NCBI GenBank assembly: GCA_002269645.1
Contig: NIVC01001603.1
Span: 134,217 to 198,216 of the forward strand
DNA length: 64,000 bases
Source: Macrostomum lignano
Lineage: Eukaryota
Direction of reading: 5' to 3'
The notes beneath the pieces are model-generated. The model saw only the letters and a program-made list of their open reading frames with translations, ran no database searches and was not told the DNA's origin. The translations under genes were made by a program, and so were the position numbers. Below are positions 1 to 52,449 of this stretch, one piece after another; position 1 is the stretch's first letter; each line of letters starts with the position of its first letter.

Positions 1-122
1 CTAGCCCTAGGCCTACTTAATACTTAATACTCACATAGGTAAATGAGTTAAATCAGTGCATGTTTTATGATACAAGCTGGTAGTGGTAGGCCTACAGCTA
101 ATAGAAGTTAATCCAACTGACA

Positions 123-410
123 CATACATGCGCAACCTCCAAAATTTGGTCGGCCATGCAACTTAGTTTTAACAAAAATACAATGTAGTTTTTGGCCAAA
201 AATGCAAAAAAACCTAAAGCAAAATTAACTTTGGGTAAACGACAAGAGTAACTATGTCTTATTAAGCCAAAAGGCCTCGTCAGCTACTTAGTACTACTAC
301 TTGGGTGTTTTTTCGAGTGGGCATGTTTTATGATGTATGCAACTTCCTTGGTTGGCTGCCAAAATCGGTCAGCCATATTGGTTGACTCAGCCGACTATTG
401 CGCATGTATG
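123..410. mobile_element. hAT-like MITE
   Basis: Perfect 13-bp TIRs (CATACATGCGCAA 123-135 / TTGCGCATGTATG 398-410) flanked by an 8-bp TSD-like pair AACTGACA / AATTGACA (one C>T difference). Confidence 0.7.
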
Positions 411-922
411 AATTGACAGATTTTCAAAATTATATGGAATATATGGAATGGGCCAGCGTAATTTTAGGCATTGCCAATTTTGGCTTGAGTAAAGTACTTA
501 CTTGATCACAGCACAAGACTGACTATTCTGAGCTATAGGACTTCTTCTCTGCTTTACCAGGAGCAGAGCTGAGCTGTGCATCAAGAGTAGAAGCACACAG
601 TGCCGCCTCAAGGCGCTTCTTCTCTCAGAAATGGCACATTCGCTCCTTCGCCTGGTTGTGCTGCTTGCAAATTTGCTAGGTATCAGCAATCTCTTGGCAA
701 GCCTGGCTTCTTTACTTCTCAGCCTCTCGATAGGCGTCGCCTCTCCTCTGTTGAAAGGCCTGCTGCAGTTCACCAAGCGTCTTCTTCACCATCCTTATAG
801 TCATCTAGAGCCTATCAGGGACTTGGCTAGAGTAGCAGAAATGCTGAAATTAAGAAATCCATACACATTAAAGCAAAAAGGGGTGCAAATATGCCAAGAA
901 ATGTCTATGTTACGACTAGAAA

Positions 923-962
923 GGGCATGTTACGACCAGAAGCTTCTGGTCGTAACATGCCC
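923..962. repeat. Perfect 40-bp palindrome
   Basis: GGGCATGTTACGACCAGAAG|CTTCTGGTCGTAACATGCCC; a partial extra arm copy lies at ~907-920. Confidence 0.95.
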
Positions 963-1899
963 CATCTTATACACATGGTTTAAACAACTGGAAAAACCTT
1001 TTTGAATCATAATAACTAGCCTGGTTATGTTTATTTGGTAGGTTTCTAGCACTCTGTGAAGCTCCTAGAGTCCTAGTGTCTGCTACAAAATGAAGCACTT
1101 TAATCATTATGGTTGTAACATAGATTTTTCCAAACAAAATTAAGTACCTAGGCGCACTTGTACTAACATAGTTGTAAATATTTTCTTTGAAAAAAAAAAA
1201 CTTTTATAAGTAAACAATTTTGGGCCTAAAAAGTCACTTGGCAATACAAATTATCATGTTTCAAAAAAGACCATAAAAATGAAGTATATGGTTCTTTTTT
1301 TGAAATAAAAAACTTCAAAAACAAAAAAACTTATGCCCAACTAGTATAGGACATAAATGGAGTCTAGAAGTTCATTTCTATATATGTTTACTTGAAAAAA
1401 ATACTTGTACCAGTTGAAATACAAAAAAAATTTGTCAAATTTGTCCAAGTTATGTAGAATGAGCCATTTATAAGTATGTTTTATATTTTATAGCTTTATA
1501 GGTTAAAATAGAACTAGTACACAATTAGTATCTAGGTAGCATATAATTAGATTTTTCCCTAAAATATTTTTTAACATATTATTCTCCTTTTCTATCTCTT
1601 TGATTTTATTGTTCATTGTTTAATGTTTATTGAAATTTTATTGAAGTCTCTAGTTTTACTACAAGAACTAGTACCAAGAAAAGAAAATCTCCTTTAATAT
1701 ATAGGCTATTAAAACCTGTAGATTTTGAAATTATAGAATTATATAATCCCTAGTCCTAGAACTATTTTTGCATATATTATTAAATTTGAAGTCATGCTCA
1801 AATAAAAAACTTGTTAATAGTTAAGATTGTGGCAAACAAAAATTATAATAAATGTACAATTAATTACAATTTGATGCCTTTGAAACTTATCTTAGTTCC

Positions 1900-2334
1900 C
1901 TGTATTTTTCAGCTGTTTCTTCTTCTCTTCTTTTTCTTCTCTTATCTTTCCTCTTCCTGCTTTATTCTTTCTTTACATCTTCTCTCCTTACTATTTTCCC
2001 TACTATTCTTTCCTCTTAACCCTTTGCTCTTATCTTTCTTTTCTTCTCTCTTCTTTTTATTCTATTATATATCTCTCCTCTTTCCATTCCTCTCTCTGTT
2101 TTCCCTCTTCTTTCCCTTCTTCTTTTCTTCCTCTTTTTTTTCTCCTCTCTCCTCTTACCTCTCTTCTCTAGTCTATCTAGTCTAGTCTAATCTATTATTT
2201 CTCCTCTCTTCTCTCTTACAATTTTCACTTTTCTTTTATCTTTTTTCTTCCCCTCTTCTCTTAGCTTTTTTTCATTTTACTTCCCTCTTCTCTCCTTTTA
2301 TCATCTATGTTTTTTCTCTGATCCCTTTCCTCAC
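1900..2334. repeat. Decayed CT-rich low-complexity tract or degenerate minisatellite (intron 1 of the pseudogene)
   Basis: Almost purely pyrimidine on the + strand; begins right after the minus-strand donor at 2334. Confidence 0.7.
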
Positions 2335-3021
2335 CCTGTCTCTCTTTTCTGATTGTCTATTCCTTCTCCTTTCTACTCTCATCTAGCCTACAGCCATGAG
2401 CTAGATTCTTTGTCTGGCCCTTGAGTTATGTCTGCTGTCCCCTGTTTCAAAAGCCAGTTTGTGAGTCATAATATTCTCATGGTTGTTTTGTTCTATTATC
2501 CATTTGCTGACTGCTTTGATCACATTATCTTTCTAACCAATTTGCAGCCCTATAAGGAATTTCTATATCTCTAGCAACTTTTAACAATCAAGCAACTTAA
2601 TACATTTCTTTGGAGGCATTAAAATTCCAAAGTGCATTTAAGTTTAACTTTCATGGTATAACTAATTTAGTAGAAATATTTTACTAGGCTTTTTCATAAA
2701 TTTTCACTTTTACAAACAAAATATATTGCATTGCCTTGATTTGCCCTCTTCCTTATTTACAGTTGAACTGCAAAATTGCTTATATAGAGGACAATGATAA
2801 GAATTTCTCTCTTAAATTCCATGGCTAAAAGTAGTCTCTCTATATATAGGATGCAAAAAGGCAATAATTTTTTTCCAAAACATTTTACATTGATTGCTAT
2901 ATACACTAAGCCTTATCATTTGACCCCTTTCTCTGGGAGTTAAGTGAGTGAAAGTGGTCAAACATTAAAAAGTAGATAAACTTCAAATAATTACAATATC
3001 CATTACAATTAATGGCAAACA

Positions 3022-3320
3022 GGGTTGTAGCCTAGTAGTCAAGGCATTAGACTTACAACTTAAAGGTTGGGGTTCAATTCTTGACTCACTTAGATCAATT
3101 TGTGTCCTTTAACAAGACACTTAACTCTGCATTGCTTTAGTTCACCTAGCTGTAAAATGGGTACCAGCATTAGCTGATGTAATTAAAGGTGTGTGGCAAC
3201 CCCCCAGTCTTTTGGACTGAACAGCCATATGTAGCCTTCAGGTACACCACACAATAGCTTTGGCTAAGCTGTCATTTGGACATCTGCCTATTAGGACAGG
3301 TGTAATCAATTGTATTATTA
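3022..3320 (+). mobile_element. tRNA-derived CORE-like SINE, heavily C>T/G>A mutated copy
   Basis: Colinear with copies at 5429, 18310, 44086 and 51238. Has degraded A/B boxes and the core CAAGACACTTAACTC...CTGTAAAATGGG. Confidence 0.85.
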
Positions 3321-4362
3321 TATTCATACATGCCTAACACCCATCCAACCTATCCAAACCAGATAGGTGAAATGGCTGCTGGCCAAGGTAAGTTGCATAA
3401 TACTACAAGAAGAAAAAAAGGAAAAGAAAAGAGAGAAAGAAGAAAGAGGAGAGAGAAAGAGAAAAAGTCATATACAAAAGTGAAAATTAGGTCGCAATCA
3501 GGGAAATTAAGTTGCAATCAGAAGGAACTAAATCACAATTGGGAGGAACTATGTCACAAATCTGAACAAAGCTAATAAGTTGCACTAGACAGGTAAACTT
3601 TTGAGGTTGTGCATATATGATTATATTATAATTATTACAATTAAGTTATTTATTTGTAACTTTTAATTGAAATAGAATAAGTCAATAAAGAATTGTGTCT
3701 AATTTAAAGTCAATTGCTTTATGTAGGGCAAACTTATGGCAATCTCGTAGTCAACTTTGAAACCTATTTTGCCACATCATGCCAAATAAAAAAGAGAAAG
3801 GCAGAGGTTGGGGTGATTAATATGCTGACAATAAGCCAAATAACTTTGAAAGTATATTTTGCCATTTATAATTAATTTTGAGGTCAAAATTTTACACAAT
3901 TGTTTTAAATTAGTTGAAGTTGTTTGTGTCAAATTTGAAAACAATAAGTAAATGTTAAAGCAATGCTATGGAGGATTTAGTAACAAATTGCACTTTTTAG
4001 CAGTTTTTGTACTTTTAGGTAAAAAGACTTCAATTTAGAAAATTTTATAAAGTAGCGCTTTTGCCCTAGTGAATTTCAGGTGGGTACAAAATTTGGTGTC
4101 ATTAGTTAAGTGGTTGTGGAGTCCATAGCAAACAAAATTATACACACATGTACATAGAGTTTTCATTTTTTTATAAATTCCTGAGATTGCTAGAAAAGCC
4201 AGCATCTCCATCTTTATCAGAGTGCGGCGCTAGACCACTGGGCCCCCTTTAATAACTGAGCTAATCTGTCCCCAACTTGTAGTTACCTATTGTATTTGTG
4301 CATAGAATCTTTTAAAATTCCTTCATTTGTTATTGCCCTTGAACAATTTCAGTGACAACAAA

Positions 4363-7300
4363 ATGGCTCTATTAAAGAACATCAGAATATTTGAAAAAGC
4401 TAGCACAGATCCCACTCTGCATAGCCTCATAATGCAGCACAAAAGCCGATCTGAGTCTGTCCTGTTTCAAAACAATCTAATCGCCACGCTGAGCGAAGTC
4501 GAGACGCAGAATTTATTGAAAGACTACACCAGAGTGCTGGATGCGTACGCATGTTTAGGCGTTCTAGCTGTCAACACGCCGAAAAATGAAACTGTCAATT
4601 TTCTCATATTGGTCACGGCATGCGTTTCTGTTGGTAAACTGCCAGACTTTGAGGTGCACAAAATCACTCGAGTAAGCTGTGTTAGTTTGCGAAATTGTCC
4701 TACAGACGCCCAGCTGGTGTCTGAGATACAGAAACTGTTGATGTCGGAGATTTTCTACTTTGCCAGAACCTCGGATGATAAGCCGTATGATTTGACTGTA
4801 AGCCGGTGGTATTGCTCTTGGCTCTGATTTTTATTAGATTAGTGTTATTTTGTAGTATGCTGTTATTTCACCCATCATTGGATAGATCATTATCCTTCGT
4901 TATTTACTAGATTAGCAATCCATTCCATTCTAATTTAATCCATATATTATTTACTAGATTAGCAATCCATTCCATTCTAATTTAATCCAACATAATTGAC
5001 TAAATTAGCAATCCATTCCATTCTAATTTAATCCAACATAATTGACTAGATTAGCAATTCATTCCATTCTAATTTAATCCAACATAATTGACTAGATTAG
5101 CAATCCATTCCATTTTAATTAAATCATACCTAATTGACTAGATTAGCAATCCATTCCATTCTAATTTAATCCATACATTATTGACTATATAATCGATCCT
5201 AGTTATTCATATTTCCTATACGAGTACTAATATCTAACCACCCAGGTATCCGTGCAAAACGCTCATTCGGGCAAGTCACGTGACAATCGGTTCTTCTGGA
5301 ATCGCGGCTTGCACCGCCTATTCGGTCAGTTTGGTGTCCCAGCCAACGATTGGCTTGTGTACGCCATCTGCGGCGGGGTGGAAGTGAAGACCATCTACTG
5401 CGGTGAGAAACAGGTGAGGCTAGTTTCCAGTTGTAGCCTATTGATAAGAGCGTCGGACTCATGACTTGAAAGTCGGGGGTTCGATTCCCGATCGTCTCAC
5501 TAGAACAATTTATATCCTGGAGCAAGACACTTAACTCTTCATTGCTTCAGTTCTCCCAGCTGTAAAATGGGTGCCAGCATTAGCTGGGGTAATTGAGGGT
5601 CTGTGTGTGGCGACCCCCCAGTCCTTGGACTGAACAGCAATAGCTGCGGCTGAGCTGTCGGTTACACATCTGCCTGTAAGGGCAGGTGTAATAAACTACA
5701 ATATTATTAATATTATTATTATTAATTGAATAGTTCTTTCCATCGACGATATAAATTTCTGAGAATACGAAATGAATCACACTCTGTCTAGCATGTTATT
5801 TATAGCACCATTTTTAAAGGTATTAATAATGAGTTCTGTGCTCAAATATGCTTTTATCGTAATTATCTGTTGTAAAAATAAATCTAGTTGATATAAATAG
5901 TTTTCCAGCAAATTAGGTGACGATGTTATTTTGTACTTTTTGCTGAATAAAATTCCTCATTTATACATTCATGCTAATCAAGGCCATTCACGGTAAAAAT
6001 TATTGAATGTTTTTGGCTTGCACTGTTTGACTGCATAATTTCTATTACTTATGTCTTAACTTATCTTCATCAAGTGTCTTTAAATGTTTTATTTGTGTTT
6101 TCTCGATGGCTCTAAGAGTGAAGTTTATCTTAAGATCATCATCTTAAGATTATCCCAGATCCCCATGTTAAAATCATCCTAGATCCTCGTGTTAAGTTAA
6201 TGCCAGATCCTCATGTTAAGATAATCCCAGATTTTCATTTTAAGATTATCCCAGATCATTTTAGGATCCTCAGTTTCAAGCTTTAAAAAATAATTACAGG
6301 TCTTGAATGTTGAATAATTGTCAGCGGGGCTTAACGTCTGAAGTACTCCTAAGCCCTTGCATGTACATATGGTATTTAAACCCGTGCGTAAATTTTTTTA
6401 TTTATTGTTAATCAGTTGCGCAACATTTCTCAATTACATTATAAGAAAGTAGCTTCATATACTTATTTTTCTACTATTCAGTAGGCAGTTTTGTGTATGT
6501 AATTAATATTTGTTAGTGCAATGTTTAAATTTGATGCATTTCGAATCATTTCAATCTGATAATAAAAATTCCTAATAACTATCCCTAATCCCAGGCTAAA
6601 GCTTGCGTCATATCCCGCTTATCTGCCGAGCGAGCCGGCACTCGTTTCAACGTTCGTGGCGCCAACGACGATGGTAAAGTGGCGAATTTCTGCGAAACCG
6701 AACAGATCATCTATCTAGACGATGCCGTCACGTCTTTCCTGCAGACTCGCGGCTCAGTGCCGCTGTTCTGGGAGCAGCCGGGCCTGCAGATTGGCAGTCA
6801 TCGGATTAAAATGTCTCGCGGATTTGAGGCCAGCAGTCACGCGTTTGTGCGCCATTTGAAGATGATGAAATCTCTGTACGGCAGTGTGGCTATTGTTAAT
6901 CTACTGGGCTGCAAGGAGGGAGAGCAGGTGATTGGGCGGTTACTGATTACTGTGGACTATATATGCCCCCTTTTGTATAGTTTTTTATATATTTTCTATG
7001 ATAGGTGCGATTTCTGTGTAATCATCTCCATAAAGGGTGAGATTTTCTTTACCTCTTATCTCCATATCAGAAAGGGTGAGATTTCCTTCACCTCTTATCT
7101 CTATATCGTAAAGGGTGGGATTTCCTTCACCTCTTATCTCCATATCATAAAGGGTGAGATTTCCTTCACCTCTTATCTCCATATCATAAAGGGTGAGATT
7201 TCCTTCACCTCTTATCTCTATATCGTAAAGGGTGGGATTTCCTTCACCTCTTATCTCCATATCATAAAGGGTGAGATTTCCTTCACCTCTTATCTCCATA

Positions 7301-13300: not shown

Positions 13301-15931
13301 GCGGCAGAATATTGCTGGTTAGATTGAAGGCAGATTCAGCTCTGTTCACTTACGCTGAAGGTGTCTCAGCTTTGCGAGCTGTTCAGGTGAGACCGCTAAT
13401 GGTTGTCTGTTGGTGGCTGTCTTGCTGATTGGCATGTGCCTGTTACTGGCTGTCTTGCTGATTGGCATGTGTCTGTCTTTCTAATATAATTGACATGTGT
13501 CTGTTAGTGGCTGTCTTGCTGATTGGCATGTGTCTGTTAGTGGCTGTCTTGCTGATTGGCATGTGTCTGTTAGTGGTTGCCTTGCTGATTGGCATGTGTC
13601 TGTTAGTGGCTGTCTTGCTGATTGGCATGTGTCTGTTAGTGGCTGTCTTGCTGATTGGCATGTGTCTGTTAGTGGCTGTCTTGCTGATTGGCATGTGTCT
13701 GTTAGTGGTTGCCTTGCTGATTGGCATGTGTCTGTTAGTGGCTGTCTTGCTGATTGGCATGTGTCTGTTAGTGGCTGTCTTGCTGATTGGCATGTGTCTG
13801 TTAGTGGCTGTCTTGCTGATTGGCATGTGTCTGTTAGTGGCTGTCTTGCTGATTGGCATGTGTCTTTAGTGGCTGTCTTGCTGATTGGCATGTGTCTGTT
13901 AGTGGCTGTCTTGCTGATTGGCATGTGCCTGTTACTGGCTGTCTTGCTGATTGACATGTGTCTGTTAGTGGCTGTCTTGCTGATTGGCATGTGTCTGTTA
14001 GTGGCTGTCTTGCTGATTGGCATGTGTCTGTTAGTGGCTGTCTTGCTGATTGGCATGTGTCTGTTAGTGGCTGTCTTGCTGATTGGCATGTGTCTGTTAG
14101 TGGCTGTCTTGCTGATTGGCATGTGTCTGTTAGTGGCTGTCTTGCTGATTGGCATGTGTCTGTTAGTGGCTGTCTTGCTGATTGGCATGTGTCTGTTAGT
14201 GGCTGTCTTGCTGATTGGCATGTGTCTGTTAGTGGCTGTCTTGCTAAAGTGCATCTTAGTAACCGGCTGAAACGTATTCGCAACCTCAATTTCCAGGAAA
14301 TCGCCGGCACCCAACTGGACGACGGTCGGCAGGTTCTGGTGGAGCTGCACCTGCCCGACTGGCGCAAACGGGCCATGGCCGACATCGTCGAAGATCCCGA
14401 CTGCCCCGACGCCGCAGCCGAGGCTGAAAGTGTCGACGACGATTCGCTAACCGGCAGCGCCGTCGCTCATTTCGACGTCGACGGAATTGTCGGCGACGAA
14501 GACGACGAGATTGCCGACGCTGACGATGTCGCCCTGGCCGGCGCGTCGATGTACCTGCCGGTGGCGCACGGGGCGCAGTCGATAAAACAGTCGCACAGCG
14601 CATCTGACCTGCTCAAGCTCCACCCGACATCCGGCGGTCTTGCCGGCCAGCGCCAGGGCTCCAATCTCAATTTGGCCGCTGATCGACGCTCGCCATCGCC
14701 TGCGCCGCCGTTGCCGCCACCGCCTGCTCGGCCGCCGCCGCCAAAATCTCCAGCTAAGTCGGCGCCGGCTCCGCCGCCGTTGCCGCCGCTGCCGAAACGG
14801 CCGCCGCCACCGTCGGTTTCGCCGCAGCCGCCGCAGCAACCGCCGCTGCCACCGCCGCCTGCTTCTCTTCAGCAGCAACAGCAGCCGCAGCCTCCGCCCC
14901 CGCAGGGGTTCCAACGACCACCTCCACCACCCGCTGGTTTTTCTGGCCCGATGCAGCGTCCCGGCGGTCCGCCCGATGGTCGATTCCCCAGGCCGGGGCC
15001 GCCGCAGCCGCACCCGTCAGATCCGCGCATGATGACAGCGCCAAGACCGCCGCCTCAGCATCCGAGACCTCATCCGCCTCCGCATCCGGGTCCTCATCCG
15101 CCTCAGCATCCGGGTCCTCGACCGCCTGGGCCTCAGCAACCAATGGGTCCTCATCCGCCTCAGCATCCGGGTCCTCATCCGCCTCAGCATCCGGGTCCTC
15201 GACCGCTTGGGCCTCAGCAACCAATGGGTCCTCATCCGCCTCAGCATCCGGGTCCTCATCCGCCTCAGCATCCGGGTCCTCATCCGCCTCAGCATCCGGG
15301 TCCTCATCCGCCTCAGCATCCGGGTCCTCGACCGCCTGGGCCTCAGCACCCCATGGGACCTCGTCCTCCGGGTCCTTATCCGCCGCCGTCGCATCCCATG
15401 GGAGGACCACGTCCCGGACCTCCTGGTCCTCATCTGCAGCATCCGATGGGTCCTAGACCGTCGCCCGGTCCGCATCAGCAGCAGACGCCGCCCCAGCCGC
15501 GCCATCCGCCGCCGCCGCCTCCGCCGCGGCCGCAAGGAGCCACCGGAGATCCTGTCGCTTTCGACCCTTGGAGCGGCCAGCAACACCAGCAGCAGCAACT
15601 ATCCACTCCATCTGCTCAGCATCGCCCCAGATCTCCATCGCCGAAACGCAAGCCTCTACCCGAACCCGCCGCCTGGTCTCCTGTCGTACCCGACGCTGAA
15701 CCTGCGCCGCCGGCGCCACCGCCGCGCCAGGCGCCACCGCAGGCGACATTCGGCGGCGAAGATTTCGCCGATTTCTCTTCGGCCTCCACCGCCGCCGCTG
15801 CTGCCGGGTCTCCCGACAAGAACGCCGCCGAACTGGAAGCCGCTTTCGGTCGGGTGTTCCGCGACGACGGCCTGGTCGTTGCGCCCAATCCACGGCCCGT
15901 GACGCCGTCGACCCCTGATGCGAATCCTTAG
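4363..15931 (+). CDS. SYNJ1: Synaptojanin (Sac1 phosphatase + inositol 5-phosphatase + RRM-like region + proline-rich tail), ~1486 aa
   Basis: Exons 4363-4797, 5246-5413, 6595-6927, 8008-8316, 9797-10467, 11467-11893, 12325-12567, 13147-13386, 14297-15931; all GT-AG with consistent phases. Motifs: [39 protein letters not shown] (Sac1 CX5R), [32 protein letters not shown]. Confidence 0.96.
4905..5190. repeat. 46-bp minisatellite, synaptojanin intron 1
   Basis: Unit GACTAGATTAGCAATCCATTCCATTCTAATTTAATCCAACATAATT, ~6 copies. Confidence 0.9.
5429..5730 (+). mobile_element. tRNA-derived CORE-like SINE in synaptojanin intron 2
   Basis: B box GGTTCGATTCCC, core similar to the MIR/CORE consensus, 3' tail CAGGTGTAAT followed by AT-rich repeats. 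Confidence 0.88.
7030..7740. repeat. 39-bp minisatellite, synaptojanin intron 3
   Basis: Unit AAAGGGTGAGATTTCCTTCACCTCTTATCTCCATATCAT, ~18 copies, with a degenerate tail to ~7980. Confidence 0.97.
8440..9640. repeat. 40-bp minisatellite, synaptojanin intron 4
   Basis: Unit GATTTGTATGGGGATTTGTAGGATTAATATTATCCCAATT, ~29 copies. Confidence 0.97.
10610..11340. repeat. 23-bp minisatellite, synaptojanin intron 5
   Basis: Unit CTCC(C/T)CTGAGAATACCAGA(G/A)AAT. Confidence 0.93.
12575..13070. repeat. 22-bp minisatellite, synaptojanin intron 7
   Basis: Unit TGAGAATTCCCTCTATCCTGTC. Confidence 0.95.
13390..14250. repeat. 33-bp minisatellite, synaptojanin intron 8
   Basis: Unit GTGTCTGTTAGTGGCTGTCTTGCTGATTGGCAT, ~25 copies. 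Confidence 0.97.
15050..15350 (+). repeat. Coding 24-bp repeat (GPHPPQHP)n in the synaptojanin tail
   Basis: CCTCAGCATCCGGGTCCTCATCCG units interleaved with [11 protein letters not shown] blocks. Confidence 0.9.
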
Positions 15932-16330: not shown

Positions 16331-17009
16331 ATAATAATCAATTAAATATCAGTAATTAGTTCTCTTATTGTATTAATTATGTTAATTAATTATAACTTAT
16401 ATAATTATCGTCGGGAATCTGCCTATTCAATACTTACTAAATCTGTTTATAGCTTTTTAGTGTAATCAGCGTCTTCTTAGGATTAGGAATATCAATTATA
16501 AGTAGAAGTGATTTGTTTCTGCACTTATTTTGGTTAAGAATTAAACTGTTTATTACAATAATGTTTACTTATAGTAGATTCAGTTCACATTAATGTTTTA
16601 TCCTTGATTTTTTGTTAAACTAATATTTAAATTTTAAAAGAAAGTTTGTGATAGTAAGTCAGTAATTTTATTAATTATACTCCTGTTTCCATTCATAACT
16701 TTCTACTGACTAAAAGTAGTAGAATGCATATCTTCAGGTGATTCTTATTCGCTATATTTCAATGCACTTTTATTCTGCATAATTCTGTATTCAATAAAAG
16801 ATTAAAGCAATTTGTTTTAATGCAAAACGTTTTTAAAGCATAATATGTTCAATTTGCAGCGTTTATCTCTAATTGAAGCGCATAATTTAAAATGTGCACC
16901 TTTTTCTTTCAATTGATAAAATATATCATTTTCGTACCTTTTGTGTATTATTAGTAGTCTTTATGTGTACTCAGATTTATTCTTTATTAGCATCAAATCT
17001 CGTGTTAAA

Positions 17010-17490: not shown

Positions 17491-18309
17491 TCATTGTCTA
17501 AGTAAAAAAACCTCAGAAAGTGTAAAATTTACACTTAAACTAGCACAGTTCAGTAGTATATTTAGATCTTGCCCATCTTCTATTCTATGTTTCTATTATT
17601 GTTGTTTGTTATTCTAGATTGGTATTGTGCTTGTTTATTAGTGTTGTATTAATAAAATAATAGTTAATCAACTTTTTTGTTAAATTATTTCTTATATAAA
17701 AGACAGCTGAGATTATGTGTTAAATCATATTTGATATTAACAGTTCAAACAGTAACTAGCAACGCCTTGCGCATATCTAGCTTAGCATCTGATGGGATGT
17801 CTTTATTCTATTCTAGAATCAATGATTAGCGCCTGACAACTGCTACAAAAGAAACTCAATTATTATATACACTAAATATATTCTGTTATTATTGTGTTAT
17901 AAATCAAATAAATATCTGCATTACTGAATTGTAGATTGCATCATAGTGTTTTTGTAGAGAGCAATGAAGACTTTTGTGCATTGTTTCTTTATTGTTATTT
18001 GATATTTAATGTGAGACTGTTGAGTTTTAAAGTGGGCCTCAATTTTCTGTTCAGAATTCTAGCTTGTATCAGTCAAATAAAAACACCAACCAACATCTCT
18101 ACCCTACTCTTTTAAATTTTTAAGTATCCCAATAATTATAGAAACATTAATACTTCAATTAGAATATAAGTTACGGTAAATATGGCGCTTAAAAGTTCCA
18201 TATACCAACAATTATAGTCAATTAAAGTTGATCTTGTCATGACCTAGGAATCTGTATAGGTCTGGGAACCATTTTATATGTAAATACTTTAACCCATTAC
18301 ACAAAAAAT

Positions 18310-18570
18310 GGGGTCGTAGCCTATAGTGGTTAGAGCGTCGGACTCTCGCGGCGAGTCGCCTGAAAGGTCAGGGGTTCGATTCCCGATCCCTCTCGGAACA
18401 ATTTGTGTCCTTGAGCAAGACACTTAACTCTGCATTGCTGCAGTTCACCCAGCTGTAAAATGGGTGCCAGCATTAGCTGGGGTAATTGAGGCTGTGTGTG
18501 GCGACCCCCCCCCCCAGTCCTTGGACTGAACAGCCGTACGCAGGTGTAATCAATTATTATAATTACAGTA
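18310..18570 (+). mobile_element. tRNA-derived CORE-like SINE, CpG-intact copy
   Basis: A box TAGCCTATAGTGGTTAGAGCG, B box GGTTCGATTCCC, core CCTTGAGCAAGACACTTAAC...CAGCTGTAAAATGGG; ~300 bp upstream of the porcupine ATG. Confidence 0.9.
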
Positions 18571-18868
18571 GCAATTAGTTTCAGTTATCTTTCAACAGTT
18601 TCTCCCCCAGTGTACATTTACCCCATGTAGTAATTGCATCACGTGACTGCCTGCCCACTTTTATCTAATCTTGCTTGTTCTATTTTTGCTACTCATTTGT
18701 TAGTAGTCAGCAATCTGAAATTTACAATCCCCGTTCAAAATTAAATTCATGTGGATATTTTACTGCCGTGTGTTATTTTCCTTCAATGACACTAGTTAAC
18801 CGATGACAATACAATTGAGTATTAGTTATTAATAATTACCGGTTATTGTTGGTTATTGAAGTCAATAA

Positions 18869-25204: not shown

Positions 25205-28200
25205 GACCCCTTCAACCCTAGATTCCTCTCCCTTCAACCCTAGATTCCTCTCCCTTCAACCCTAGATTCCTCTCCCTGCAACCTAGATTCCTCTCCCTGC
25301 AACCCTAGATTCCTCTCCATGCAACCCTAGATTCCTCTCCATGCAACCCTAGATTCCACTGCCTGCAACCCAAGATTCCTCTCCCTGCAACCCTAGATTC
25401 CTCTCCATGCAACCCTAGATTCCACTCCCTGCAACCCTAGATTCCACTCCCTTCTCATCCCTAGATTCCTCTCCCTACAATCCTAGATTCCACTCCCTGC
25501 AACCCTAGATTCCACTCCCTGCAACCCTAGATTCCTCTCCCTGCAACCCTAGATTCCTCTCCCTGCAATCCTAGATTCCACTCCCTGCAACCCTAGATTC
25601 CACTCCCTACAACCCTAGATTTCTCTCCCTGCAACCCTAGATTCCTCTCCCTGCAACCCTAGATTCCTCTCCCTGCAACCCTAGATTCCTCTCCCTTCAA
25701 CCCTAGATTCCACTCCCTGCAACCCTAGATTCCACTCCCTGCAACCCTAGATTCCTCTCCCTGCAACCCTAGATTCCACTCCCTGCAACCCTAGATTCCT
25801 CTCCCTGCAACCCTAGATTCCACTCCCTGCAACCCTAGATTCCACTCCCTGCAGCCCTAGATTCCACTCCCTGCAACCCTAGATTCCTCTCCCTGCAATC
25901 CTAGATTCCTCTCCCTGCAACCCTAGATTCCTCTCCCTTCAACCCTAGATTCCTCTCCCTTCAACCTAGATTCCTTTCCCTTCTCAACCCTAGATTCCTC
26001 TCCCTTCAACCCTAGATTCCTCTCCCTGCAATCCTAGATTCCTCTCCCTGCAATCCTAGATTCCTCTCCCTGCAACCCTAGATTCCTCTCCCTGCAATCC
26101 TAGATTCCTCTCCCTTCAACCCTAGATTCGTCTCCCTTCAACCCTAGATTCCTCTCCCTTCAACCCTAGATTCCTCTCCCTTCAACCCTAGATTCCACTC
26201 CCTGCAACCCTAGATTCCACTCCCTGCAACCCTAGATTCCACTCCCTGCAACCCTAGATTCCTCTCCCTGCAATCCTAGATTCCTCTCCCTGCAACCCTA
26301 GATTCCTCTCCCTGCAACCCTAGATTCCACTCCCTGCAACCCTAGATTCCACTCCCTGCAACCCTAGATTCCTCTCCCTGCAATCCTAGATTCCTCTCCC
26401 TGCAACCCTAGATTCCTCTCCCTTCAACCCTAGATTCCTCTCCCTTCAACCTAGATTCCTTTCCCTTCTCAACCCTAGATTCCTCTCCCTTCAACCCTAG
26501 ATTCCTCTCCCTGCAATCCTAGATTCCTCTCCCTGCAATCCTAGATTCCTCTCCCTGCAACCCTAGATTCCTCTCCCTGCAATCCTAGATTCCTCTCCCT
26601 TCAACCCTAGATTCGTCTCCCTTCAACCCTAGATTCCTCTCCCTTCAACCCTAGATTCCTCTCCCTTCAACCCTAGATTCCACTCCCTGCAACCCTAGAT
26701 TCCACTCCCTGCAACCCTAGATTCCCCTCCTTGCAACCCTAGATTCCACTCCCTGCAACCCTAGATTCCACTCCCTGCAACCCTAGATTCCTCTCCCTTC
26801 TCAACCCTAGATTCCTCTCCCTGCAACCCTAGATTCCTCTCCCTGCAATCCTAGATTCCTCTCCCTGCAATCCTAGATTCCTCTCCCTGCAACCCTAGAT
26901 TCCACTCCCTGCAACCCTAGATTCCCCTCCTTGCAACCCTAGATTCCACTCCCTGCAACCCTAGATTCCACTCCCTGCAACCCTAGATTCCTCTCCCTTC
27001 TCAACCCTAGATTCCTCTCCCTGCAACCCTAGATTCGTCTCCCTTCAACCCTAGATCCCTCTTCCTTCACCCCTAGATTCCTCTCCCTGCAACCCTAGAT
27101 TCGTCTCCCTTCAACCCTAGATCCCTCTTCCTTCACCCCTAGATTCCTCTCCCTGCAACCCTAGATTCCTCTCCCTTCAACCCTAGATCCCTCTTCCTTC
27201 ACCCCTAGATTCCTCTCCTGCAACCCTAGATTCGTCTCCCTTCAACCCTAGATCCCTCTTCCTTCACCCCTAGATTCCTCTCCCTGCAACCCTAGATTCC
27301 TCTCCCTTCAACCCTAGATCCCTCTTCCTTCACCCCTAGATTCCTCTCCCTGCAACCCTAGATTCCTCTCCCTTCAACCCTAGATCCCTCTTCCTTCACC
27401 CCTAGATTCCTCTCCCTGCAACCCTAGATTCGTCTCCCTTCAACCCTAGATCCCTCTTCCTTCACCCCTAGATTCCTCTCCCTGCAACCCTAGATTCCTC
27501 TCCCTTCAACCCTAGATCCCTCTTCCTTCACCCCTAGATTCCTCTCCCTGCAACCCTAGATTCCTCTCCCTTCAACCCTAGATCCCTCTTCCTTCACCCC
27601 TAGATTCCTCTCCCTGCAACCCTAGATTCGTCTCCCTGCAACCCTAGATCCCTCTTCCTTCACCCTAGATTCCTCTCCCTGCAACCCTAGATTCCTCTCC
27701 CTTCAACCCTAGATCCCTCTTCCTTCACCCCTAGATTCCTCTCCCTGCAACCCTAGATTCCTCTCCCTTCAACCCTAGATCCCTCTTCCTTCACCCCTAG
27801 ATTCCTCTCCCTGCAACCCTAGATTCGTCTCCCTGCAACCCTAGATCCCTCTTCCTTCACCCCTAGATTCCTCTCCCTGCAACCCTAGATTCCTTTCCCT
27901 TCACCCCTAGATTCCTCTTCCTTCACCCCTAGATTCCTCTCCCTGCAACCCTAGATTCCTCTCCCTTCAACCCTAGATCCCTCTTCCTTCACCCCTAGAT
28001 TCCTCTCCCTGCAACCCTAGATTCGTCTCCCTGCAACCCTAGATCCCTCTTCCTTCACCCCTAGATTCCTCTCCCTGCAACCCTAGATTCCTCTCCCTTC
28101 AACCCTAGATCCCTCTTCCTTCACCCCTAGATTCCTCTCCCTGCAACCCTAGATTCCTCTCCCTTCAACCCTAGATCCCTCTTCCTTCACCCCTAGATTC

Positions 28201-28280
28201 CTCTCCCTGCAACCCTAGATTCGTCTCCCTGCAACCCTAGATCCCTCTTCCTTCACCCCTAGATTCCTTTCCCTTCAGCC
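25205..28280. repeat. 22-bp minisatellite with higher-order structure
   Basis: Unit CAACCCTAGATTCC(T/A)CTCCCTG; a 66-bp trimer dominates from ~27040. Confidence 0.97.
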
Positions 28281-28874
28281 CTAACAAATCGTTCCTTTTA
28301 ACTTTAGCTAGCCACAACTTCTTTATTTGTGTGAAAAGTGTCACTTGCAAAGTACATACAGTTGAGTTTCAGAAGCTCATAGCTGAATTACTAAAAAGTT
28401 TCCAATTGTCTCCAATTGCTTACTACGCATGTCCTGTTATAATCAAAGCTATGTCTATTCTTTTCTGCGCTCAAATATCTTACTTATTAAATTTGACATG
28501 TCACTGCAATCCATCCTCTGCTATTTAATCTTCAAGTACAAAAATTATTTTAAACTGTTTCTATGGCGAATAATTGTATAATTTGCGTTATTCTGAACTA
28601 ATAAAAATCGATTGTTAATATTAGTTAGTTGGCGTAGATATTAATTTGCATGTGAACTATACACTTACTATAAATCTGCTTCCTTGTATGCTTATTTTAG
28701 TAACAAAAATCAAGCAAAACTGCTTCCTCAGTTCGAGTCTGTGTTTATTTTTTTTGCATCTAAGGACATTTTCAAAGGCGATTTTGTTTTCTTGATTTTC
28801 ACTGTGTTTTTTCTGATATTTTTATTAGTATGTATTGAGATGGCAACTATAGAGTATAGACTGTAGAGTGTCTC

Positions 28875-30946: not shown

Positions 30947-33900
30947 ATGCTGGAACCTGTTGAAGATTCTCAGGCCGTAGTGCGCCCAGAAGACGATGAT
31001 AACATCGATGACGAGGATCTGGAAGGTGCCAACAACTCAGCAGCCGCTGGTGCTGGCAATGCCTCAGGTGCCACCAGTAATCGTCCACCTTCGTCAGCTT
31101 TTCATCAACAGAAATTACCAGCATGGCAACCGTTGCTAACCGCTGGCACAGTGTTTCCCGTGTTCTTAATCATGTCGATTGCCTTTATCTGCCTTGGTGT
31201 GGCCTTGCTATTGGCTAATTCCAACATATCCGAGCTATCAATTGACTACACCGATTGTAAACGCATTGGGGATCGAACTCCGTGCGCTAATCTAGTGAAG
31301 AAACCCGAATTCTATTATAATTATAGCGTCTGCCAGTGCCGGCTGGAGTTCAAGCTTGACAAACCTATGACTGGGCAGGTGTACGCATACTATGCTCTGA
31401 CTAACTTTCACCAGAATCACAGAAAGTAAGCCTGTTTAAGTGGACATGTCTTTAATCCCCGAATCCCAAATACGTGTCTTTAATCCCCGAATCCCAAATC
31501 TGTGTCTTTAATCCCCAAATCCCAAATCTGTGTCTTTAATCCCCAAATCCCAAATTCGTGTCTTTAATCTCCAAATCCCAAATCCGTGTCTTTAATCCCC
31601 AAATCCCAAATTCGTGTCTTTAATCTCCAAATCCCAAATCCGTGTCTTTAATCCCCGAATCCCAAATCCATGTCTTCAATCCCCAAATCCCAAATCCGTG
31701 TCTTTAATCCCCAAATCCCAAATCCGTGTCTTTAATCCCCAAATCCCAAATCCGTGTCTTTAAACCCAAATCCCAAATCCGTGTCTTTAATCCGCGAATC
31801 TCAAATCCGTGTCTTTAATCCCCAAATCTCAAATCCGTGTCTTTAATCCCCAAATCCCAAATCCGTGTCTTTAATCCCCAAATCCCAAATCCGTGTCTTT
31901 AAACCCAAATCCCAAATCCGTGTCTTTAATCACCGAATCCCAAATCCGTGTCTTTAATCCCCAAATCCCAAATCCGTGTCTTTAATCCGCGAATCCCAAA
32001 TCCATGTCTTTAATCCCCAAATCCCAAATCAGTGTCTTTAATCTCCAAATCCCAAATCCGTGTCTTTAATCCCCAAATCCCAAATCTGTGTCTTTAATCC
32101 CCGAATCCCAAATCCGTGTCTTTAATCTCCAAATCCCAAATCCGTGTCTTAAATCTCCAAATCCCAAATCCGTGTCTTTAATCCCCAAATCCCAAATCCG
32201 TGTCTTTAATCCGCGAATCCCAAATCCATGTCTTTAATCCCCAAATCCCAAATCCGTGTCTTTAATCCCCAAATCCCAAATTCGTGTCTTTAATCCCCAA
32301 ATCCCAAATCTGTGTCTTTAATCCCCGAATCCCAAATTCGTGTCTTTAATCCCCGAATCCCAAATTCGTGTCTTTAATCCCCGAATCCCAAATCCGTGTC
32401 TTTAATCCTACAATTCGGATTCCGAACCCCATCACTCACATCCCAGAATTCCATTCAAAGTCATTTAATCCAAAACCAGGTGTTCCACATAATTTATCTC
32501 TAATAATCTGCTCCATTCCCCGTCGCCCAGGTACGTCAAATCGCATGACCGGATGCAGCTCTCGGGCCGTCGCTACTCCGACTTGGACGCCGAATGCGAG
32601 CCGTACCGGACATCCGCCGACGGCAAATGGATCGCCCCCTGCGGCGCTGTGGCTAACAGCTTGTTCAACGATACGTTTAAGCTCATGCGTCGCGTTGGCA
32701 GCCTTGAAACTGTGCCATGGACCGTTAAGGGTATCAGCTGGTCGGCAGATGTGGCTAGAAAATACGGCCGAGTAGACACCTGGAATGGAACAGCTAAGCC
32801 ACCAAACTGGGCTGTGCCAGAGTCCGCCCGAAGTCCGATAGGTTACACTGGGGACGAGGAACTGCAGGTAAGCGTCTTTTATAGGATCCCTAATCCCTAT
32901 CGCTAATCCATAATCCACTATCAGTAATATCTAATCCTCAATCCACTATCAGTAATATCTAATCCCTAATCCACTATCAGTAATATCTAATCCCTAATCC
33001 ACTATCAGTAATATCTAATCCGTAATCCACTATCAGTGACCTCTAATCCTTAATCCACTTTCAGTGATCTCTAATCCTCAATCCACTATCAGTAATATCT
33101 AATCCTCAATCCGCTTTCAGTAATATCTAATCCTCAATCCACTATCAGTAATATCTAATCCTCAATCCGCTTTCAGTAATATCTAATCCTTAATCCACTA
33201 TCAGTAATATCTAATCCTCAATCCGCTTTCAGTAATATCTAATCCTCAATCCACTATCACGAATTTCTAATCCCTAATCCACTAACAGTGATCTCTAATC
33301 CCTAATCCACTAACAGTGATCTCTAATCCCTAATCCACTATCAGTGACCTCTAATCCTTAATCCACTTTCAGTGATCTCTAATCCTCAATCCACTATCAG
33401 TAATATCTAATCCTCAATCCGCTTTCAGTAATATCTAATCCTCAATCCACTATCAGTAATATCTAATCCTCAATCCACTATCAGTAATATCTAATCCTCA
33501 ATCCACTATCAGTAATATCTAATCCTCAATCCACTATCAGTAATATCTAATCCTTAATCCACTATCAGTAATATCTAATCCTTAATCCACTATCAGTAAT
33601 ATCTAATCCTTAATCCACTATCAGTAATATCTAATCCCTAATCCACTATCAGTAATATCTAATCCTTAATCCACTATCAGTAATATCTAATCCTCAATCC
33701 ACTATCAGTAATATCTAATCCTTAATCCACTATCAGTAATATCTAATCCTTAATCCACTATCAGTAATATCTAATCCTTAATCCACTATCAGTAATATCT
33801 AATCCTCCATCCACTTGCAATGATCTCTAATACTTAATCCCTAATCTTAATGACAGTAGTATACTCGTAAATCAGCATAAGTCTAAAGCGTTTACAAATC

Positions 33901-50990: not shown

Positions 50991-51237
50991 TAATCTTAAT
51001 AACCTGGAATCTAGATGCCCCGATACCTCATCACCTCGAAACTACATTGTCAAAAAGTATAGCTATTCGTCTGTCACTAAATTCGAAAATTCTATCTTTT
51101 AAATCCCCTCTTGACTTCTGAAAAGACGAAATCCGACTATTGCATAGCAAAAGCACTTTATAGCTCATAGTGGGGCAAATTAATCAAAGTTTATTTTCTT
51201 GTTTAGTATCTGTCTAACCTAAGTACGGAAAAGAAAT

Positions 51238-51393
51238 TGATTGAATGATTGAATACACCTGAGATGTGCAACCGACAGCTCAGCCGCAGCTATTGCGCGG
51301 CGCATCTGAAGGCTGCGTACGGCTGTTCAGTCCAAGGACTGGGGGGTCGCCACACACACCCTCAATTACCCCAGCTAATGCTGGCACCATTTT
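51238..51393 (-). mobile_element. 5'-truncated SINE copy (3' part, CpG intact)
   Basis: Reverse complement of AAAATGGTGCCAGCATTAGCTGGGG...CAGCCGTACGCAGCCTTCAGATGCGCCGCGCAATAGCTGCGG...CAGGTGTATTCAAT. Confidence 0.88.
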
Positions 51394-52449
51394 CTGGCAA
51401 ATGGAGGCAATGCAGAAATCTAACTGGCTCTAATGATAATGTAAGTTTTATTGCAGTCTAGAAATCAGTTCATATGAATTCAACTGACTCTATGCCATAA
51501 ATTTATAAAAGCTTATAAAAGATTGGCGCGTCCTCAATATTTTTATTCAAATTCCTGTGCCCTAATCTCAGCCTAGAGACGTCGGCACTTTATTGCATGC
51601 TCCCCTTCCTTCTACAGAATCTTAATGAACTTTGCACTTTATGGTCATCGAGAGCAATGATACAGCTGACACACAAAAGCAAAATACACTCACGTAAAAT
51701 CCTACATGATTACTTTCTGTAACTTGATTAAAGCAGCAGTAATCAGTGAATTATGTTCGTTTTATTTTAAGCTAATTGTTATCTAGATTGTATCAATAAA
51801 TCCTTCTGATATCAAACTTAGCGAACTTGTAAAAGATTTTCTCTTGAAAAACGATTCAAAAGCCTAGAAAAGTCGAAACCTTGTAAATTTAGCAAGAAAA
51901 ACTCTATAGTGTACGAGCACCTTAGTCCCTAATGTTACTCGTAATCCTTCAATTATTAAAGCAACAATTTACGTGCAAATAACTCACCTTGAAGAGGTAA
52001 TAGCATCAGAAGTCCAATGTTGATAAACATTAACAGAGGCATCAATCTTTTAGCTAAGCTGGAATTCGGTGACATGTTAAACTTCTACCTGCAGTATGTT
52101 ATAAGACTAATATTTATCGATTCTATGCAGAGCGACGCCACCAAAAAGCCTTTGTCAGTAAACTGGCGTCTCTTTGCAGTGCTTTTCCAGAGCGATCCTG
52201 TCTCTTTTTACATGTATCCTACTCCCAGTGGAGCAATTCATATACGCCCCACTATACATTTTATCCTACGCCCCTTCGATGCGCGTCTAGCGCCCTGGCG
52301 CACAATTTGTCCAGTCAGGGCAACTACGTTTACCCTGCGCCCTTTCGACAGTCGAATAAATAATAACGGGATATCCTATTTATTCTACTTATAGTAGGAA
52401 GTAAGTAAATACCGGTATATGTATTCACGGGCCATACTAATGGATCCCA

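What the first reader, a model, noticed from the sequence alone, without database searches (positions are those of the whole stretch)
1..4300. RIP-like C>T/G>A hypermutation domain in an animal-like genome
Seen: from ~1000 to 4200 CpG is nearly absent and CTAG/TAG/TAA are conspicuously frequent, whereas comparably AT-rich DNA at 36-39 kb keeps many CpGs. Three independent features in the zone (a gene, a SINE and a MITE TSD) show transitions on both strands, including non-CpG (CpA/TpG) changes, and the gene has no indels. The signal fades near the first synaptojanin coding exon. Known: fungal RIP produces dense CpA>TpA changes in duplicated DNA, while ordinary animal 5mC decay is mostly CpG-limited. 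Inference: a localized methylation/deamination system acted on a silenced or duplicated segment.
Basis: partly seen in the sequence, partly recalled or inferred. Interest (0 to 1): 0.88.

Follow-up and report, generated by a model that had tools for sequence, protein, structure and literature searches.

The report
CpG-decayed, probably methylated, intergenic block
The DNA upstream of a synaptojanin gene has lost almost every CpG, which is the usual long-term mark of germline DNA methylation in an otherwise unmethylated invertebrate-type genome and not a fungal-style RIP hypermutation.

Summary
The core observation is real. Window 952-4224 holds 4 CpGs where 55-63 are expected, and 1154-3492 holds none. 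This is the only long CpG-free stretch in the window that is not a tandem array. The rest of the window has a CpG o/e of about 0.9.

The loss is specific to CpG. GpC is normal. All 16 ancestral CpG sites of the SINE copy inside the block now read CA, TG or TA, while four copies elsewhere keep 34 of 41. A decayed transposon ORF at 526-831 shows Arg-to-Cys, His and stop changes.

RIP is not supported:
- TpA/ApT is 1.06 and (CpA+TpG)/(ApC+GpT) is 1.24, the same as CpG-rich AT-rich controls.
- TAA, TTAA, ATAG and TTAG are not raised.
- Unique DNA is affected, while SINE copies elsewhere are spared, so targeting goes by position and not by repeat.
- No hidden duplicate exists in the window.

The CTAG excess and CAG/CTG deficit are real but confined to 952-1889. 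They probably reflect that sub-block's own sequence history.

A borderline excess of non-CpG C>T changes in the SINE (p about 0.05, biased to a 5' pyrimidine) remains unexplained.

Best reading: a stably germline-methylated, repeat-derived block that ends at the synaptojanin 5' end. This is ordinary biology. Methylation itself could not be tested.

The parts
952..4224 (.). CpG-extinct core block: GC 0.31, 4 CpGs, o/e about 0.05 (95% CI 0.015-0.14)
   Evidence: GpC o/e is normal at 1.15-1.33. Symmetrised rho: CG 0.06, TA 0.84, CA/TG 1.12.
1..951 (.). Partly CpG-depleted left flank (o/e 0.43-0.45, 17-20 CpGs). It is built of repeat elements that may be younger and is cut by the window edge, so the domain probably continues to the left.
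   Evidence: MITE-like inverted ends: catacatgcgca at 123-134 and tgcgcatgtatg at 400-411 (read).
952..1889 (.). Sub-block A: very AT-rich (GC 0.26). It carries the CTAG excess (13 against 1.95 expected) and the CAG/CTG deficit (o/e 0.54). There is a weak 18-bp periodicity.
1890..2400 (+). Polypyrimidine (CT-rich) low-complexity tract with a (TCTAG)n microsatellite at 2167-2194. Few or no Gs, so it says little about CpG.
2401..3011 (.). Sub-block B: unique DNA with 0 CpGs (14.6 expected) and CA/TG raised to 1.21. No significant CTAG excess.
3012..3327 (+). tRNA-derived SINE copy (tRNA-like head at 3021-3092). All 16 ancestral CpG sites are lost. It has 19 private C>T/G>A changes, 1 T>C and 3 transversions.
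3395..3480 (+). Polypurine low-complexity tract, loosely complementary to the CT tract.
3484..3521 (+). 20-bp minisatellite (TRF array 3484-3521, 1.9 copies). The first unit keeps gtCGcaat (the surviving CpG at 3493) and the second reads gtTGcaat. Downstream, to about 3565, atCAcaat and gtCAcaaat read like further decayed units (by eye).
3481..4224 (.). Sub-block C: 3 CpGs (11.9 expected), CA/TG 1.25, CAA/TTG 2.04.
898..1130 (-). Foldback, MITE-like head of a transposon-like unit. The GTTACGAC motif occurs at 903-916 and in the perfect 40-bp palindrome at 923-962. A decayed copy, ggtTgtaacatag, lies at 1110-1122 inside the zone. It straddles the left edge of the core.
526..831 (-). Decayed small basic ORF of the same unit. 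It has in-frame TAA, TAG and TGA stops inside the homologous stretch (a fourth stop lies just upstream of the ATG). It matches P0052 at 43% identity over 74 aa with no gaps. Arg codons of the homolog align with TGC, CAT and TGA here.
   Evidence: The same hairpin-plus-ORF arrangement occurs in contig L001.
4225..4362 (+). Right boundary: CpGs reappear (4225, 4228) just upstream of the start codon. A splice-acceptor-like tttcag ends at 4352.
4363..4797 (+). First coding exon of synaptojanin, CpG-rich. Downstream exons carry Syja_N and 5-phosphatase domains. The gene body has CpG o/e of about 0.85-1.0.
5417..5714 (+). Comparison SINE copy in a synaptojanin intron; it keeps 8 of 11 aligned CpG sites. 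The other comparison copies are 18306-18639 (+), 44076-44400 (+) and 51231-51487 (-).

Best explanation
The first 4.2 kb of the window is repeat-derived, non-coding DNA upstream of synaptojanin, or possibly in its 5' UTR intron.

Inferred mechanism: it has long sat in a stably germline-methylated domain of a genome that is otherwise largely unmethylated, the 'mosaic' pattern typical of invertebrates. Methylated cytosines in CpG deaminate to thymine much faster than other bases change. CpG therefore turns into TpG or CpA until almost none is left.
- The oldest parts (952-4224) have lost essentially all CpGs.
- Transposon insertions in 1-951 that may be younger have lost about half. Their relative age is not established.
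- The domain ends at the 5' end of synaptojanin, whose exons and introns keep a normal CpG content.

Shown here: the CpG-specific loss, its TG/CA products, its dependence on position, and its boundaries.

Inferred, not shown: that the cause is 5-methylcytosine in the germline, and that the domain is a transcription unit or a silenced repeat cluster.

The CTAG excess and CAG/CTG deficit belong to one sub-block (952-1889). They are most simply that sub-block's own sequence history, for example relics of the CTAG-core minisatellites of about 20 bp that are common in this window.
For: 1. CpG is 4 against 55-63 expected, while GpC is normal and the rest of the window has o/e 0.89.
2. In the zone SINE, 0 of 16 CpG sites survive. 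Most now read CA or TG (single-step products) and two read TA. The other copies keep 34 of 41 (Fisher p = 4e-9).
3. The minisatellite at 3484-3521 and the foldback arm at 1110-1122 show CG>TG or CG>CA against their sister copies.
4. In the decayed ORF, Arg positions of the homolog are TGC, CAT and TGA.
5. Words made by CpG decay are raised: CAA/TTG 1.36x, CCA/TGG 1.54x, ACA/TGT 1.14x. CA/TG is 1.21-1.38 in sub-blocks B, SINE and C against 1.05-1.19 in controls.
6. The effect follows position and not repeat identity: unique DNA is hit, and four other SINE copies are spared.
7. The zone SINE has about as many transversions as the other copies (3 against 3-5), so greater age alone does not explain the CpG loss.
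8. No strand skew: A 829, T 850, C 356, G 365.
9. Mosaic methylation, CpG depletion as its footprint, and methylation of introns and transposons are established for invertebrates (PMC4378273, PMC11292947, PMC8857917, PMC8857923).
Against: - Methylation was not measured and the species is unknown.
- An o/e of about 0.05 is, from my own recollection, lower than the values usually reported for methylated invertebrate gene bodies (about 0.3-0.6). It is closer to, or below, vertebrate bulk DNA.
- Zone-wide CA/TG is only 1.12 against 1.08 in controls. That is less than expected if about 60 CpGs had recently become TG or CA. Sub-block A shows no CA/TG excess at all.
- Non-CpG C>T changes in the SINE are 2-4 times more frequent than in other copies (p about 0.05) and biased to a 5' pyrimidine (YC 11/46 against RC 2/52, p = 0.006). 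More than 99% of invertebrate 5mC is reported in CpG (PMC4378273), so CpG methylation does not explain this.
- Simple C>T forward models do not reproduce the CAG/CTG deficit or the CTAG excess.
Confidence: 0.68

Rival explanations
1. On top of, or instead of, 5mC decay, an enzymatic or damage-driven C>T hypermutation acted on this block in all cytosine contexts. Candidates are an AID/APOBEC-like deaminase, a RIP-like process, or poorly repaired dipyrimidine damage in closed chromatin.
For: - The zone SINE has 12 (+6 in the tail) non-CpG C>T changes against 4 (+4) other changes. The other copies have 9 (+1) against 14 (+2). Fisher p is about 0.05.
- These changes prefer a 5' T or C: 11/46 against 2/52, p = 0.006, with TCA 4/8. 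Other copies show 3 YC to 6 RC.
- Two direct CCAG>CTAG events are visible: SINE 3146 and foldback motif 916.
- The zone's GC is 0.31 and CAG/CTG is depleted.
Against: - RIP indices match the controls: 1.06 and 1.24 against 0.99 and 1.12. RIP-affected fungal repeats show 1.65-3.55 and 0.24-0.58 (PMC2621366).
- TpA, TAA, TTAA, ATAG and TTAG are not raised.
- TC/GA and CC/GG dinucleotides are not depleted across the zone; CC/GG is in fact enriched.
- C>T and G>A changes are interleaved and there is no strand skew, unlike single-strand editing.
- Repeat copies elsewhere are untouched and no duplicate partner exists in the window.
- Numbers are small, the tests were chosen after seeing the data, and only five SINE copies define the consensus.
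Confidence: 0.12
2. Much of the CpG lack is inherited and not mutational. The block, especially 952-1889, descends from expansions of CpG-free repeat units such as CTAG-core minisatellites of about 20 bp, which then degenerated.
For: - The other long CpG-free gaps checked lie within or largely within tandem arrays whose units lack CpG.
- Several arrays (4902-5187, 25208-28283, 42779-43536) have CpG-free units that contain CTAG.
- Five of 24 CTAG-to-CTAG intervals in the zone are 18-23 bp (p = 0.002, chosen after seeing the data). There is a (TCTAG)n microsatellite, and a weak lag-18 autocorrelation in 952-1889.
- Sub-block A lacks the CA/TG excess expected from CpG decay.
Against: - The SINE, the minisatellite at 3484-3521, the foldback arm and the ORF all show real CG>TG/CA substitutions in place.
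- TRF finds no array even at score 30. So many substitutions have accumulated since any array existed. In unmethylated DNA these would have created new CpGs toward the o/e of about 0.9 seen elsewhere.
- Sub-block A has GC 0.26 against 0.4-0.5 for the extant arrays.
Confidence: 0.12
3. Artefact: the block is a sequencing, polishing or assembly error, for example deaminated template or a mis-joined contig.
For: There is no positive evidence. It cannot be excluded without reads.
Against: - The changes are specific to CpG, which chemical damage is not.
- Bisulfite-type conversion would keep methylated CpGs and remove other Cs, the opposite of what is seen.
- Many non-CpG Cs remain.
- The block contains the genome's own SINE and transposon families and grades into its flanks.
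Confidence: 0.03

Closest known systems
Germline 5mC-driven CpG depletion in methylated domains of mosaically methylated invertebrate genomes (gene bodies, introns, some transposons)
   Same: CpG-specific loss with TpG/CpA products and normal GpC. A sharp domain sits next to unmethylated DNA with CpG o/e near 1, and the boundary lies at a gene's 5' end (PMC4378273, PMC11292947, PMC8857917, PMC8857923).
   Different: The depletion is unusually complete (o/e about 0.05). The depleted block has no recognisable exon. Methylation itself is untested. One sub-block has extra word-frequency oddities (CTAG, CAG/CTG).
Fungal repeat-induced point mutation (Neurospora type)
   Same: C>T/G>A transitions on both strands, lowered GC, and stop codons in a transposon ORF.
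   Different: Here CpG is the overwhelming target and CpA is not. There is no TpA gain and no CpA/TpG loss. Targeting follows position and not homology: other repeat copies are spared and unique DNA is hit. No duplicate partner was found. RIP is described as confined to a few fungal clades (PMC12543289, PMC2621366).
TpCpG-targeted RIP-like hypermutation of repeats in Pucciniomycotina (PMC3318451)
   Same: C>T at CpG-containing sites in transposon-like DNA.
   Different: That process is defined on repeat families genome-wide. Here all CpG contexts are lost (TCG, CCG, GCG, ACG), and repeat copies outside the block are not affected.
AID/APOBEC editing of retroelements or clustered deaminase mutation
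   Same: The non-CpG C>T changes in the zone SINE prefer a 5' T or C.
   Different: Editing is strand-coordinated and usually confined to one element. Here both strands are affected, changes are interleaved, there is no base skew, and the effect spans several unrelated elements and unique DNA.
Vertebrate-type bulk DNA (CpG o/e about 0.2) abutting an unmethylated promoter or CpG island
   Same: CpG-poor DNA ends where a gene's 5' end begins.
   Different: In this window the gene body and all other sequence are CpG-normal. The CpG-poor state is the exception and not the rule.

Membership tests
Fungal-type RIP | C>T transitions concentrated at CpA (CpA>TpA dominance) | tested here: not met
   SINE: CpG 16/16 sites lost. 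With the stricter consensus, CpG is 13/22 against CpA 7/35, CpT 3/31 and CpC 3/32. CpA changes are 8 of about 28 C>T events.
Fungal-type RIP | RIP indices: TpA/ApT high (0.89 or more, and well above controls) and (CpA+TpG)/(ApC+GpT) low (1.03 or less) | tested here: not met
   Zone: 1.06 and 1.24. CpG-rich AT-rich control: 0.99 and 1.12. Only 952-1889 is borderline (1.15, 1.03), like the control at 16340-17007 (1.03, 1.08). Thresholds and RIP-affected values are from PMC2621366.
Fungal-type RIP | Homology-dependent: acts on duplicated sequence, and all copies are affected | tested here: not met
   Four other SINE copies keep 34 of 41 CpG sites and carry few C>T changes. Unique parts of the zone are equally CpG-free. 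No duplicate was found, even with a transition-blind search. Caveat: only 64 kb could be searched.
Fungal-type RIP | RID/Dim-2-type cytosine methyltransferase in the genome | not testable with these tools
   Only this window is available. Homologs of the synaptojanin exons tried were absent or only 62-71% identical fragments, so the source genome does not appear to be in the searchable collections.
Germline-methylated domain with CpG decay | CpG strongly under-represented while GpC and other dinucleotides are not | tested here: met
   rho CG 0.06, GC 1.25, TA 0.84. Poisson P is 3e-19 or less.
Germline-methylated domain with CpG decay | Ancestral CpG sites replaced by TpG or CpA | tested here: met
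   At the 16 SINE sites most now read CA or TG and two read TA. Also seen in the minisatellite and the foldback arm and in Arg>Cys/His/stop changes in the ORF.
Germline-methylated domain with CpG decay | Compensating excess of TpG/CpA | tested here: inconclusive
   CA/TG is 1.21-1.38 in sub-blocks B, SINE and C against 1.05-1.19 in controls. It is 1.09 in sub-block A and 1.12 zone-wide.
Germline-methylated domain with CpG decay | Domain-wise (mosaic) pattern with unmethylated neighbours at CpG o/e near 1 | tested here: met
   Unmasked DNA in the rest of the window has o/e 0.89. No other non-repeat 500-bp window falls below 0.29.
Germline-methylated domain with CpG decay | 5-methylcytosine actually present at the locus in germ cells, and DNMT1/DNMT3 in the genome | not testable with these tools
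   No methylation data and no genome are available.
AID/APOBEC-type editing | Strand-coordinated clusters of C>T or G>A | tested here: not met
   C>T and G>A alternate along the SINE. Zone base counts are symmetric.
AID/APOBEC-type editing | Preference for a particular 5' neighbour (TC/CC or WRC) | tested here: inconclusive
   In the SINE, YC is 11/46 against RC 2/52 (p = 0.006). But TC/GA and CC/GG are not depleted across the zone.

The most novel reading that the evidence does not exclude
Besides CpG decay, a position-restricted germline C>T hypermutation with a 5'-pyrimidine preference has acted on a silenced repeat block in an animal genome. It could be deaminase-like, or it could reflect unrepaired dipyrimidine damage in closed chromatin. 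It would leave extra non-CpG transitions, CCAG>CTAG conversions and a CAG/CTG deficit. That would be a chromatin-domain-targeted mutagenic silencing footprint, something not described in metazoans.
Probability: 0.08. Interest if true: 0.7.

Novelty: already known. Interest (0 to 1): 0.2.

Why it matters
As it stands this is a clear local example of a well-known phenomenon. In mosaically methylated invertebrate genomes, stably methylated DNA loses its CpGs. The sequence alone can therefore mark where a methylated domain ends, here at the 5' end of a neuronal gene.

Its practical value is as an annotation cue. It probably marks a methylated or silenced repeat block, or the tail of an upstream transcription unit. 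It is also a caution that RIP-like impressions in AT-rich animal DNA should be tested with context-resolved counts.

Only if the small non-CpG, 5'-pyrimidine-biased excess proved general would it point to something new.

Tried and rejected
- Orthologous, allelic or paralogous sequence for a polarised spectrum was not obtainable. Synaptojanin exon 1 found no homolog. The 5-phosphatase exon found only fragments at 62-71% identity. The 653-aa ORF is not on record. Two SINE-core patterns had no match in the metagenome contigs.
- Six-frame Pfam scans of 1-4350, with X at stops, found nothing. No recognisable gene lies in the CpG-free core.
- blastn, tblastx and tblastn of the zone against the window found only the SINE.
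- A purine/pyrimidine-collapsed search for a transition-masked duplicate gave non-SINE hits no better than a reversed-sequence null. The best candidate (3267-3434 against 18002-18168) did not align.
- I ran forward simulations of CpG-only decay, uniform C>T and CpA-specific C>T on control DNA. None reproduced the non-CpG word pattern. The CpA model pushed CAA/TTG the wrong way and left CAG/CTG far too high.
- A Dcm-like CCWGG origin of CTAG is rejected: only 10 of 25 CTAGs are CCTAG or CTAGG, against about 7 expected.
- A general CAG>TAG process is rejected: ATAG and TTAG are not raised.
- Greater age of the zone SINE as the sole explanation is rejected: its transversions and T>C changes are no more frequent than in other copies.
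- A bisulfite-read artefact is rejected on logic: it would keep methylated CpGs and remove other Cs.
- Periodicity in 952-1889 is only a weak lag-18 signal (z = 3.6, within the range of control maxima).


Full report
**What is in the sequence**

The window is invertebrate-like. About 36% of it is minisatellite arrays. It carries a synaptojanin gene from 4363 to about 15.9 kb, with Syja_N and 5-phosphatase domains. It also carries a CDC50 exon and a Cys-loop receptor exon. Outside tandem arrays its CpG o/e is 0.89, and 0.78 in AT-rich parts. Most of it is therefore not CpG-depleted.

Positions 952-4224 stand out against this background. Only four CpGs occur there (1153, 3493, 3746, 4056), against a local-composition expectation of 71.1. 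After scaling by the window's own o/e that is 55-63, and Poisson P is 3e-19 or less. There are none at all in 1154-3492, where about 38 are expected. This 2340-bp gap is the longest in the window. The other long gaps I checked against the TRF table lie within or largely within tandem arrays whose units lack CpG. GpC is normal at 1.15-1.33. AT-rich DNA at 35.4-39 kb has a CpG o/e of 1.01. CpGs return at 4225/4228 and are dense in the first synaptojanin exon. The left flank, 1-951, is half depleted (o/e 0.43-0.45) and runs off the window.

**Is the loss mutational, and what kind?**

The window holds five copies of a tRNA-derived SINE. At 16 aligned sites where other copies have CpG, the copy in the zone (3012-3327) never does. 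Most of these sites now read CA or TG and two read TA. The four other copies keep 34 of 41 (Fisher p = 4e-9).

Three other internal comparisons agree:
- The 20-bp minisatellite at 3484-3521 has a first unit with gtCGcaat and a second with gtTGcaat. Further decayed units (atCAcaat, gtCAcaaat) appear to follow, read by eye.
- The foldback motif GTTACGAC (903-916, and both arms of the perfect palindrome 923-962) reads GTTACAAC in element orientation at 1110-1122, inside the zone.
- A decayed small ORF at 526-831 (minus strand) aligns without gaps over 74 residues to an 89-aa protein, P0052 (E = 2e-7). Arg positions of the homolog are TGC, CAT and TGA in the window copy.

These are the classic products of 5-methylcytosine deamination at CpG. 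Words produced by CpG decay are raised: CAA/TTG, CCA/TGG and ACA/TGT. CA/TG is 1.21-1.38 in sub-blocks B, SINE and C, against 1.05-1.19 in controls.

**Test of the RIP reading**

According to the literature, RIP makes C>T changes in a CpA context, in repeats, in a homology-dependent way. It is known only from some fungal clades (PMC12543289, PMC2621366, PMC3318451). The evidence here goes against it:
- TpA/ApT is 1.06 and (CpA+TpG)/(ApC+GpT) is 1.24 in the zone. The CpG-rich AT-rich control gives 0.99 and 1.12. RIP-affected fungal repeats show 1.65-3.55 and 0.24-0.58 (PMC2621366).
- TpA is not raised (rho 0.84 against 0.85-0.89).
- TAA, TTAA, ATAT, ATAG and TTAG are not raised.
- In the SINE the order of C>T is CpG (all sites) far above CpA, CpT and CpC (7/35, 3/31, 3/32).
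- Other copies of the same repeat in the window are spared and unique DNA in the zone is affected, so targeting goes by position.
- blastn, tblastx and a transition-blind purine/pyrimidine search found no duplicate of the zone in the window.

**What remains odd**

1. CTAG is about 3-fold over-represented (25 observed, about 8.6 expected). It exceeds all 14 contiguous control chunks. CAG/CTG is low (0.96 against 1.22-1.87).
   - Both features are confined to sub-block A, 952-1889 (GC 0.26). There CTAG is 13 against 1.95 expected and CAG/CTG is 0.54. The rest of the CpG-free domain does not show a significant excess.
   - The CTAGs account for the whole TAG/CTA excess.
   - Five of 24 CTAG intervals are 18-23 bp (p = 0.002, chosen after seeing the data). 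There is a (TCTAG)n microsatellite and a weak lag-18 periodicity.
   - Several extant minisatellites in this window have CpG-free units of about 20 bp that contain CTAG.
   - I therefore read sub-block A as carrying its own sequence history. Two direct CCAG>CTAG changes are nevertheless visible.
2. The zone SINE has more non-CpG C>T changes than the other copies, although its transversion count is similar. It has 12 non-CpG C>T against 4 other changes; the others have 9 against 14 (p about 0.05).
   - These changes prefer a 5' pyrimidine: YC 11/46 against RC 2/52 (p = 0.006). Other copies show 3 YC to 6 RC.
   - TC and CC dinucleotides are not depleted across the zone. Only five SINE copies define the consensus, and several contexts were tried after seeing the data. 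I treat this as a lead and not a finding.
3. Simple forward models of C>T mutation do not reproduce the non-CpG word pattern.

**Explanation**

The best-supported account is a stably germline-methylated, repeat-derived block in a mosaically methylated genome. It ends at the 5' end of an unmethylated neuronal gene.
- Mosaic methylation, with methylated regions interspersed among unmethylated DNA, is the invertebrate norm. More than 99% of 5mC there is in CpG (PMC4378273).
- The targets are gene bodies, introns and, in some species, transposons (PMC11292947, PMC8857917).
- CpG depletion is the accepted evolutionary footprint of such methylation (PMC8857923).

The gradient from o/e 0.45 in 1-951 to 0.05 in the core may reflect element age. 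The left part consists of transposon-like insertions: a MITE-like element at 123-411 and the hairpin-plus-ORF unit at 526-1130. The latter includes a still-perfect 40-bp palindrome. The relative ages were not measured.

Shown: the CpG-specific decay in place, its products, its dependence on position, and its borders. Inferred: methylation as the cause, and the nature of the domain (the tail of an upstream transcription unit, a 5' UTR intron, or a silenced repeat cluster).

Points against are the very low o/e, the weak zone-wide CA/TG excess and the non-CpG oddities above. The rivals are listed with their own tests in the Rival explanations section: added hypermutation, inherited CpG-free repeats, and artefact.

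**Verdict**

The RIP-like interpretation is not supported. The more general idea of a localised methylation and deamination footprint is supported. This is an ordinary, already known kind of feature, so interest is low. The residual 5'-pyrimidine-biased non-CpG excess is the only thread that could lead somewhere new, and it needs the whole genome to test.

Noticed in passing
window 526-1130 (minus orientation); locus L001 1-945: A transposon-like unit of unknown family. It has repeats of the motif GTTACGACC, including a perfect 40-bp palindrome at 923-962, about 100 bp upstream of a small basic coiled-coil ORF. The same hairpin-plus-ORF arrangement, with an intact 89-aa ORF (P0052), occurs on an unrelated 945-bp Logan contig from SRR27422824. 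There was no Pfam hit, and only one cluster was found among 1.84 billion representatives.
   Followed up: partly
window 4902-5187, 25208-28283, 41722-42357, 42779-43536: Several minisatellite arrays of about 20-46 bp units share a CTAG core, and most are CpG-free. Overall about 36% of the window is tandem arrays, mostly in introns.
   Followed up: partly
window 123-411: MITE-like element with inverted ends, catacatgcgca and tgcgcatgtatg, and internal repeated 'ccaaaatYggtcRgccat' motifs. It keeps its CpGs although it lies in the half-depleted flank.
   Followed up: no
window 57003-58964 (+): Intact 653-aa ORF with no Pfam domain and no exact match on record. It looks like a transposase-type or domesticated gene. 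It lies opposite a 166-aa antisense ORF.
   Followed up: partly
window 14300-15930 (+): The last large synaptojanin exon is 63-66% GC and encodes a proline-rich repeat region (PPQHPGPH repeats). Its CpG o/e of about 1.07 contrasts sharply with the AT-rich introns.
   Followed up: no
window 17501-18300 and 59201-59700: Two short non-repeat stretches with moderately low CpG (o/e about 0.3). They are the only others below 0.35 in 500-bp scans.
   Followed up: no
window 3012-3327, 5417-5714 vs 18306-18639, 44076-44400: The SINE copies seem to fall into two subfamilies. One reads TAGA and the other CGGA after the tRNA-like head, and some copies have a tail while others are truncated. Only the CpG-decayed zone copy scores as a tRNA in Rfam (34.9 bits).
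   Followed up: partly
window 30947-31429 (+) and 43511-43954 (-): Neighbouring genes: a CDC50/TMEM30-family first exon and a transmembrane exon of a neurotransmitter-gated ion channel.
   Followed up: partly
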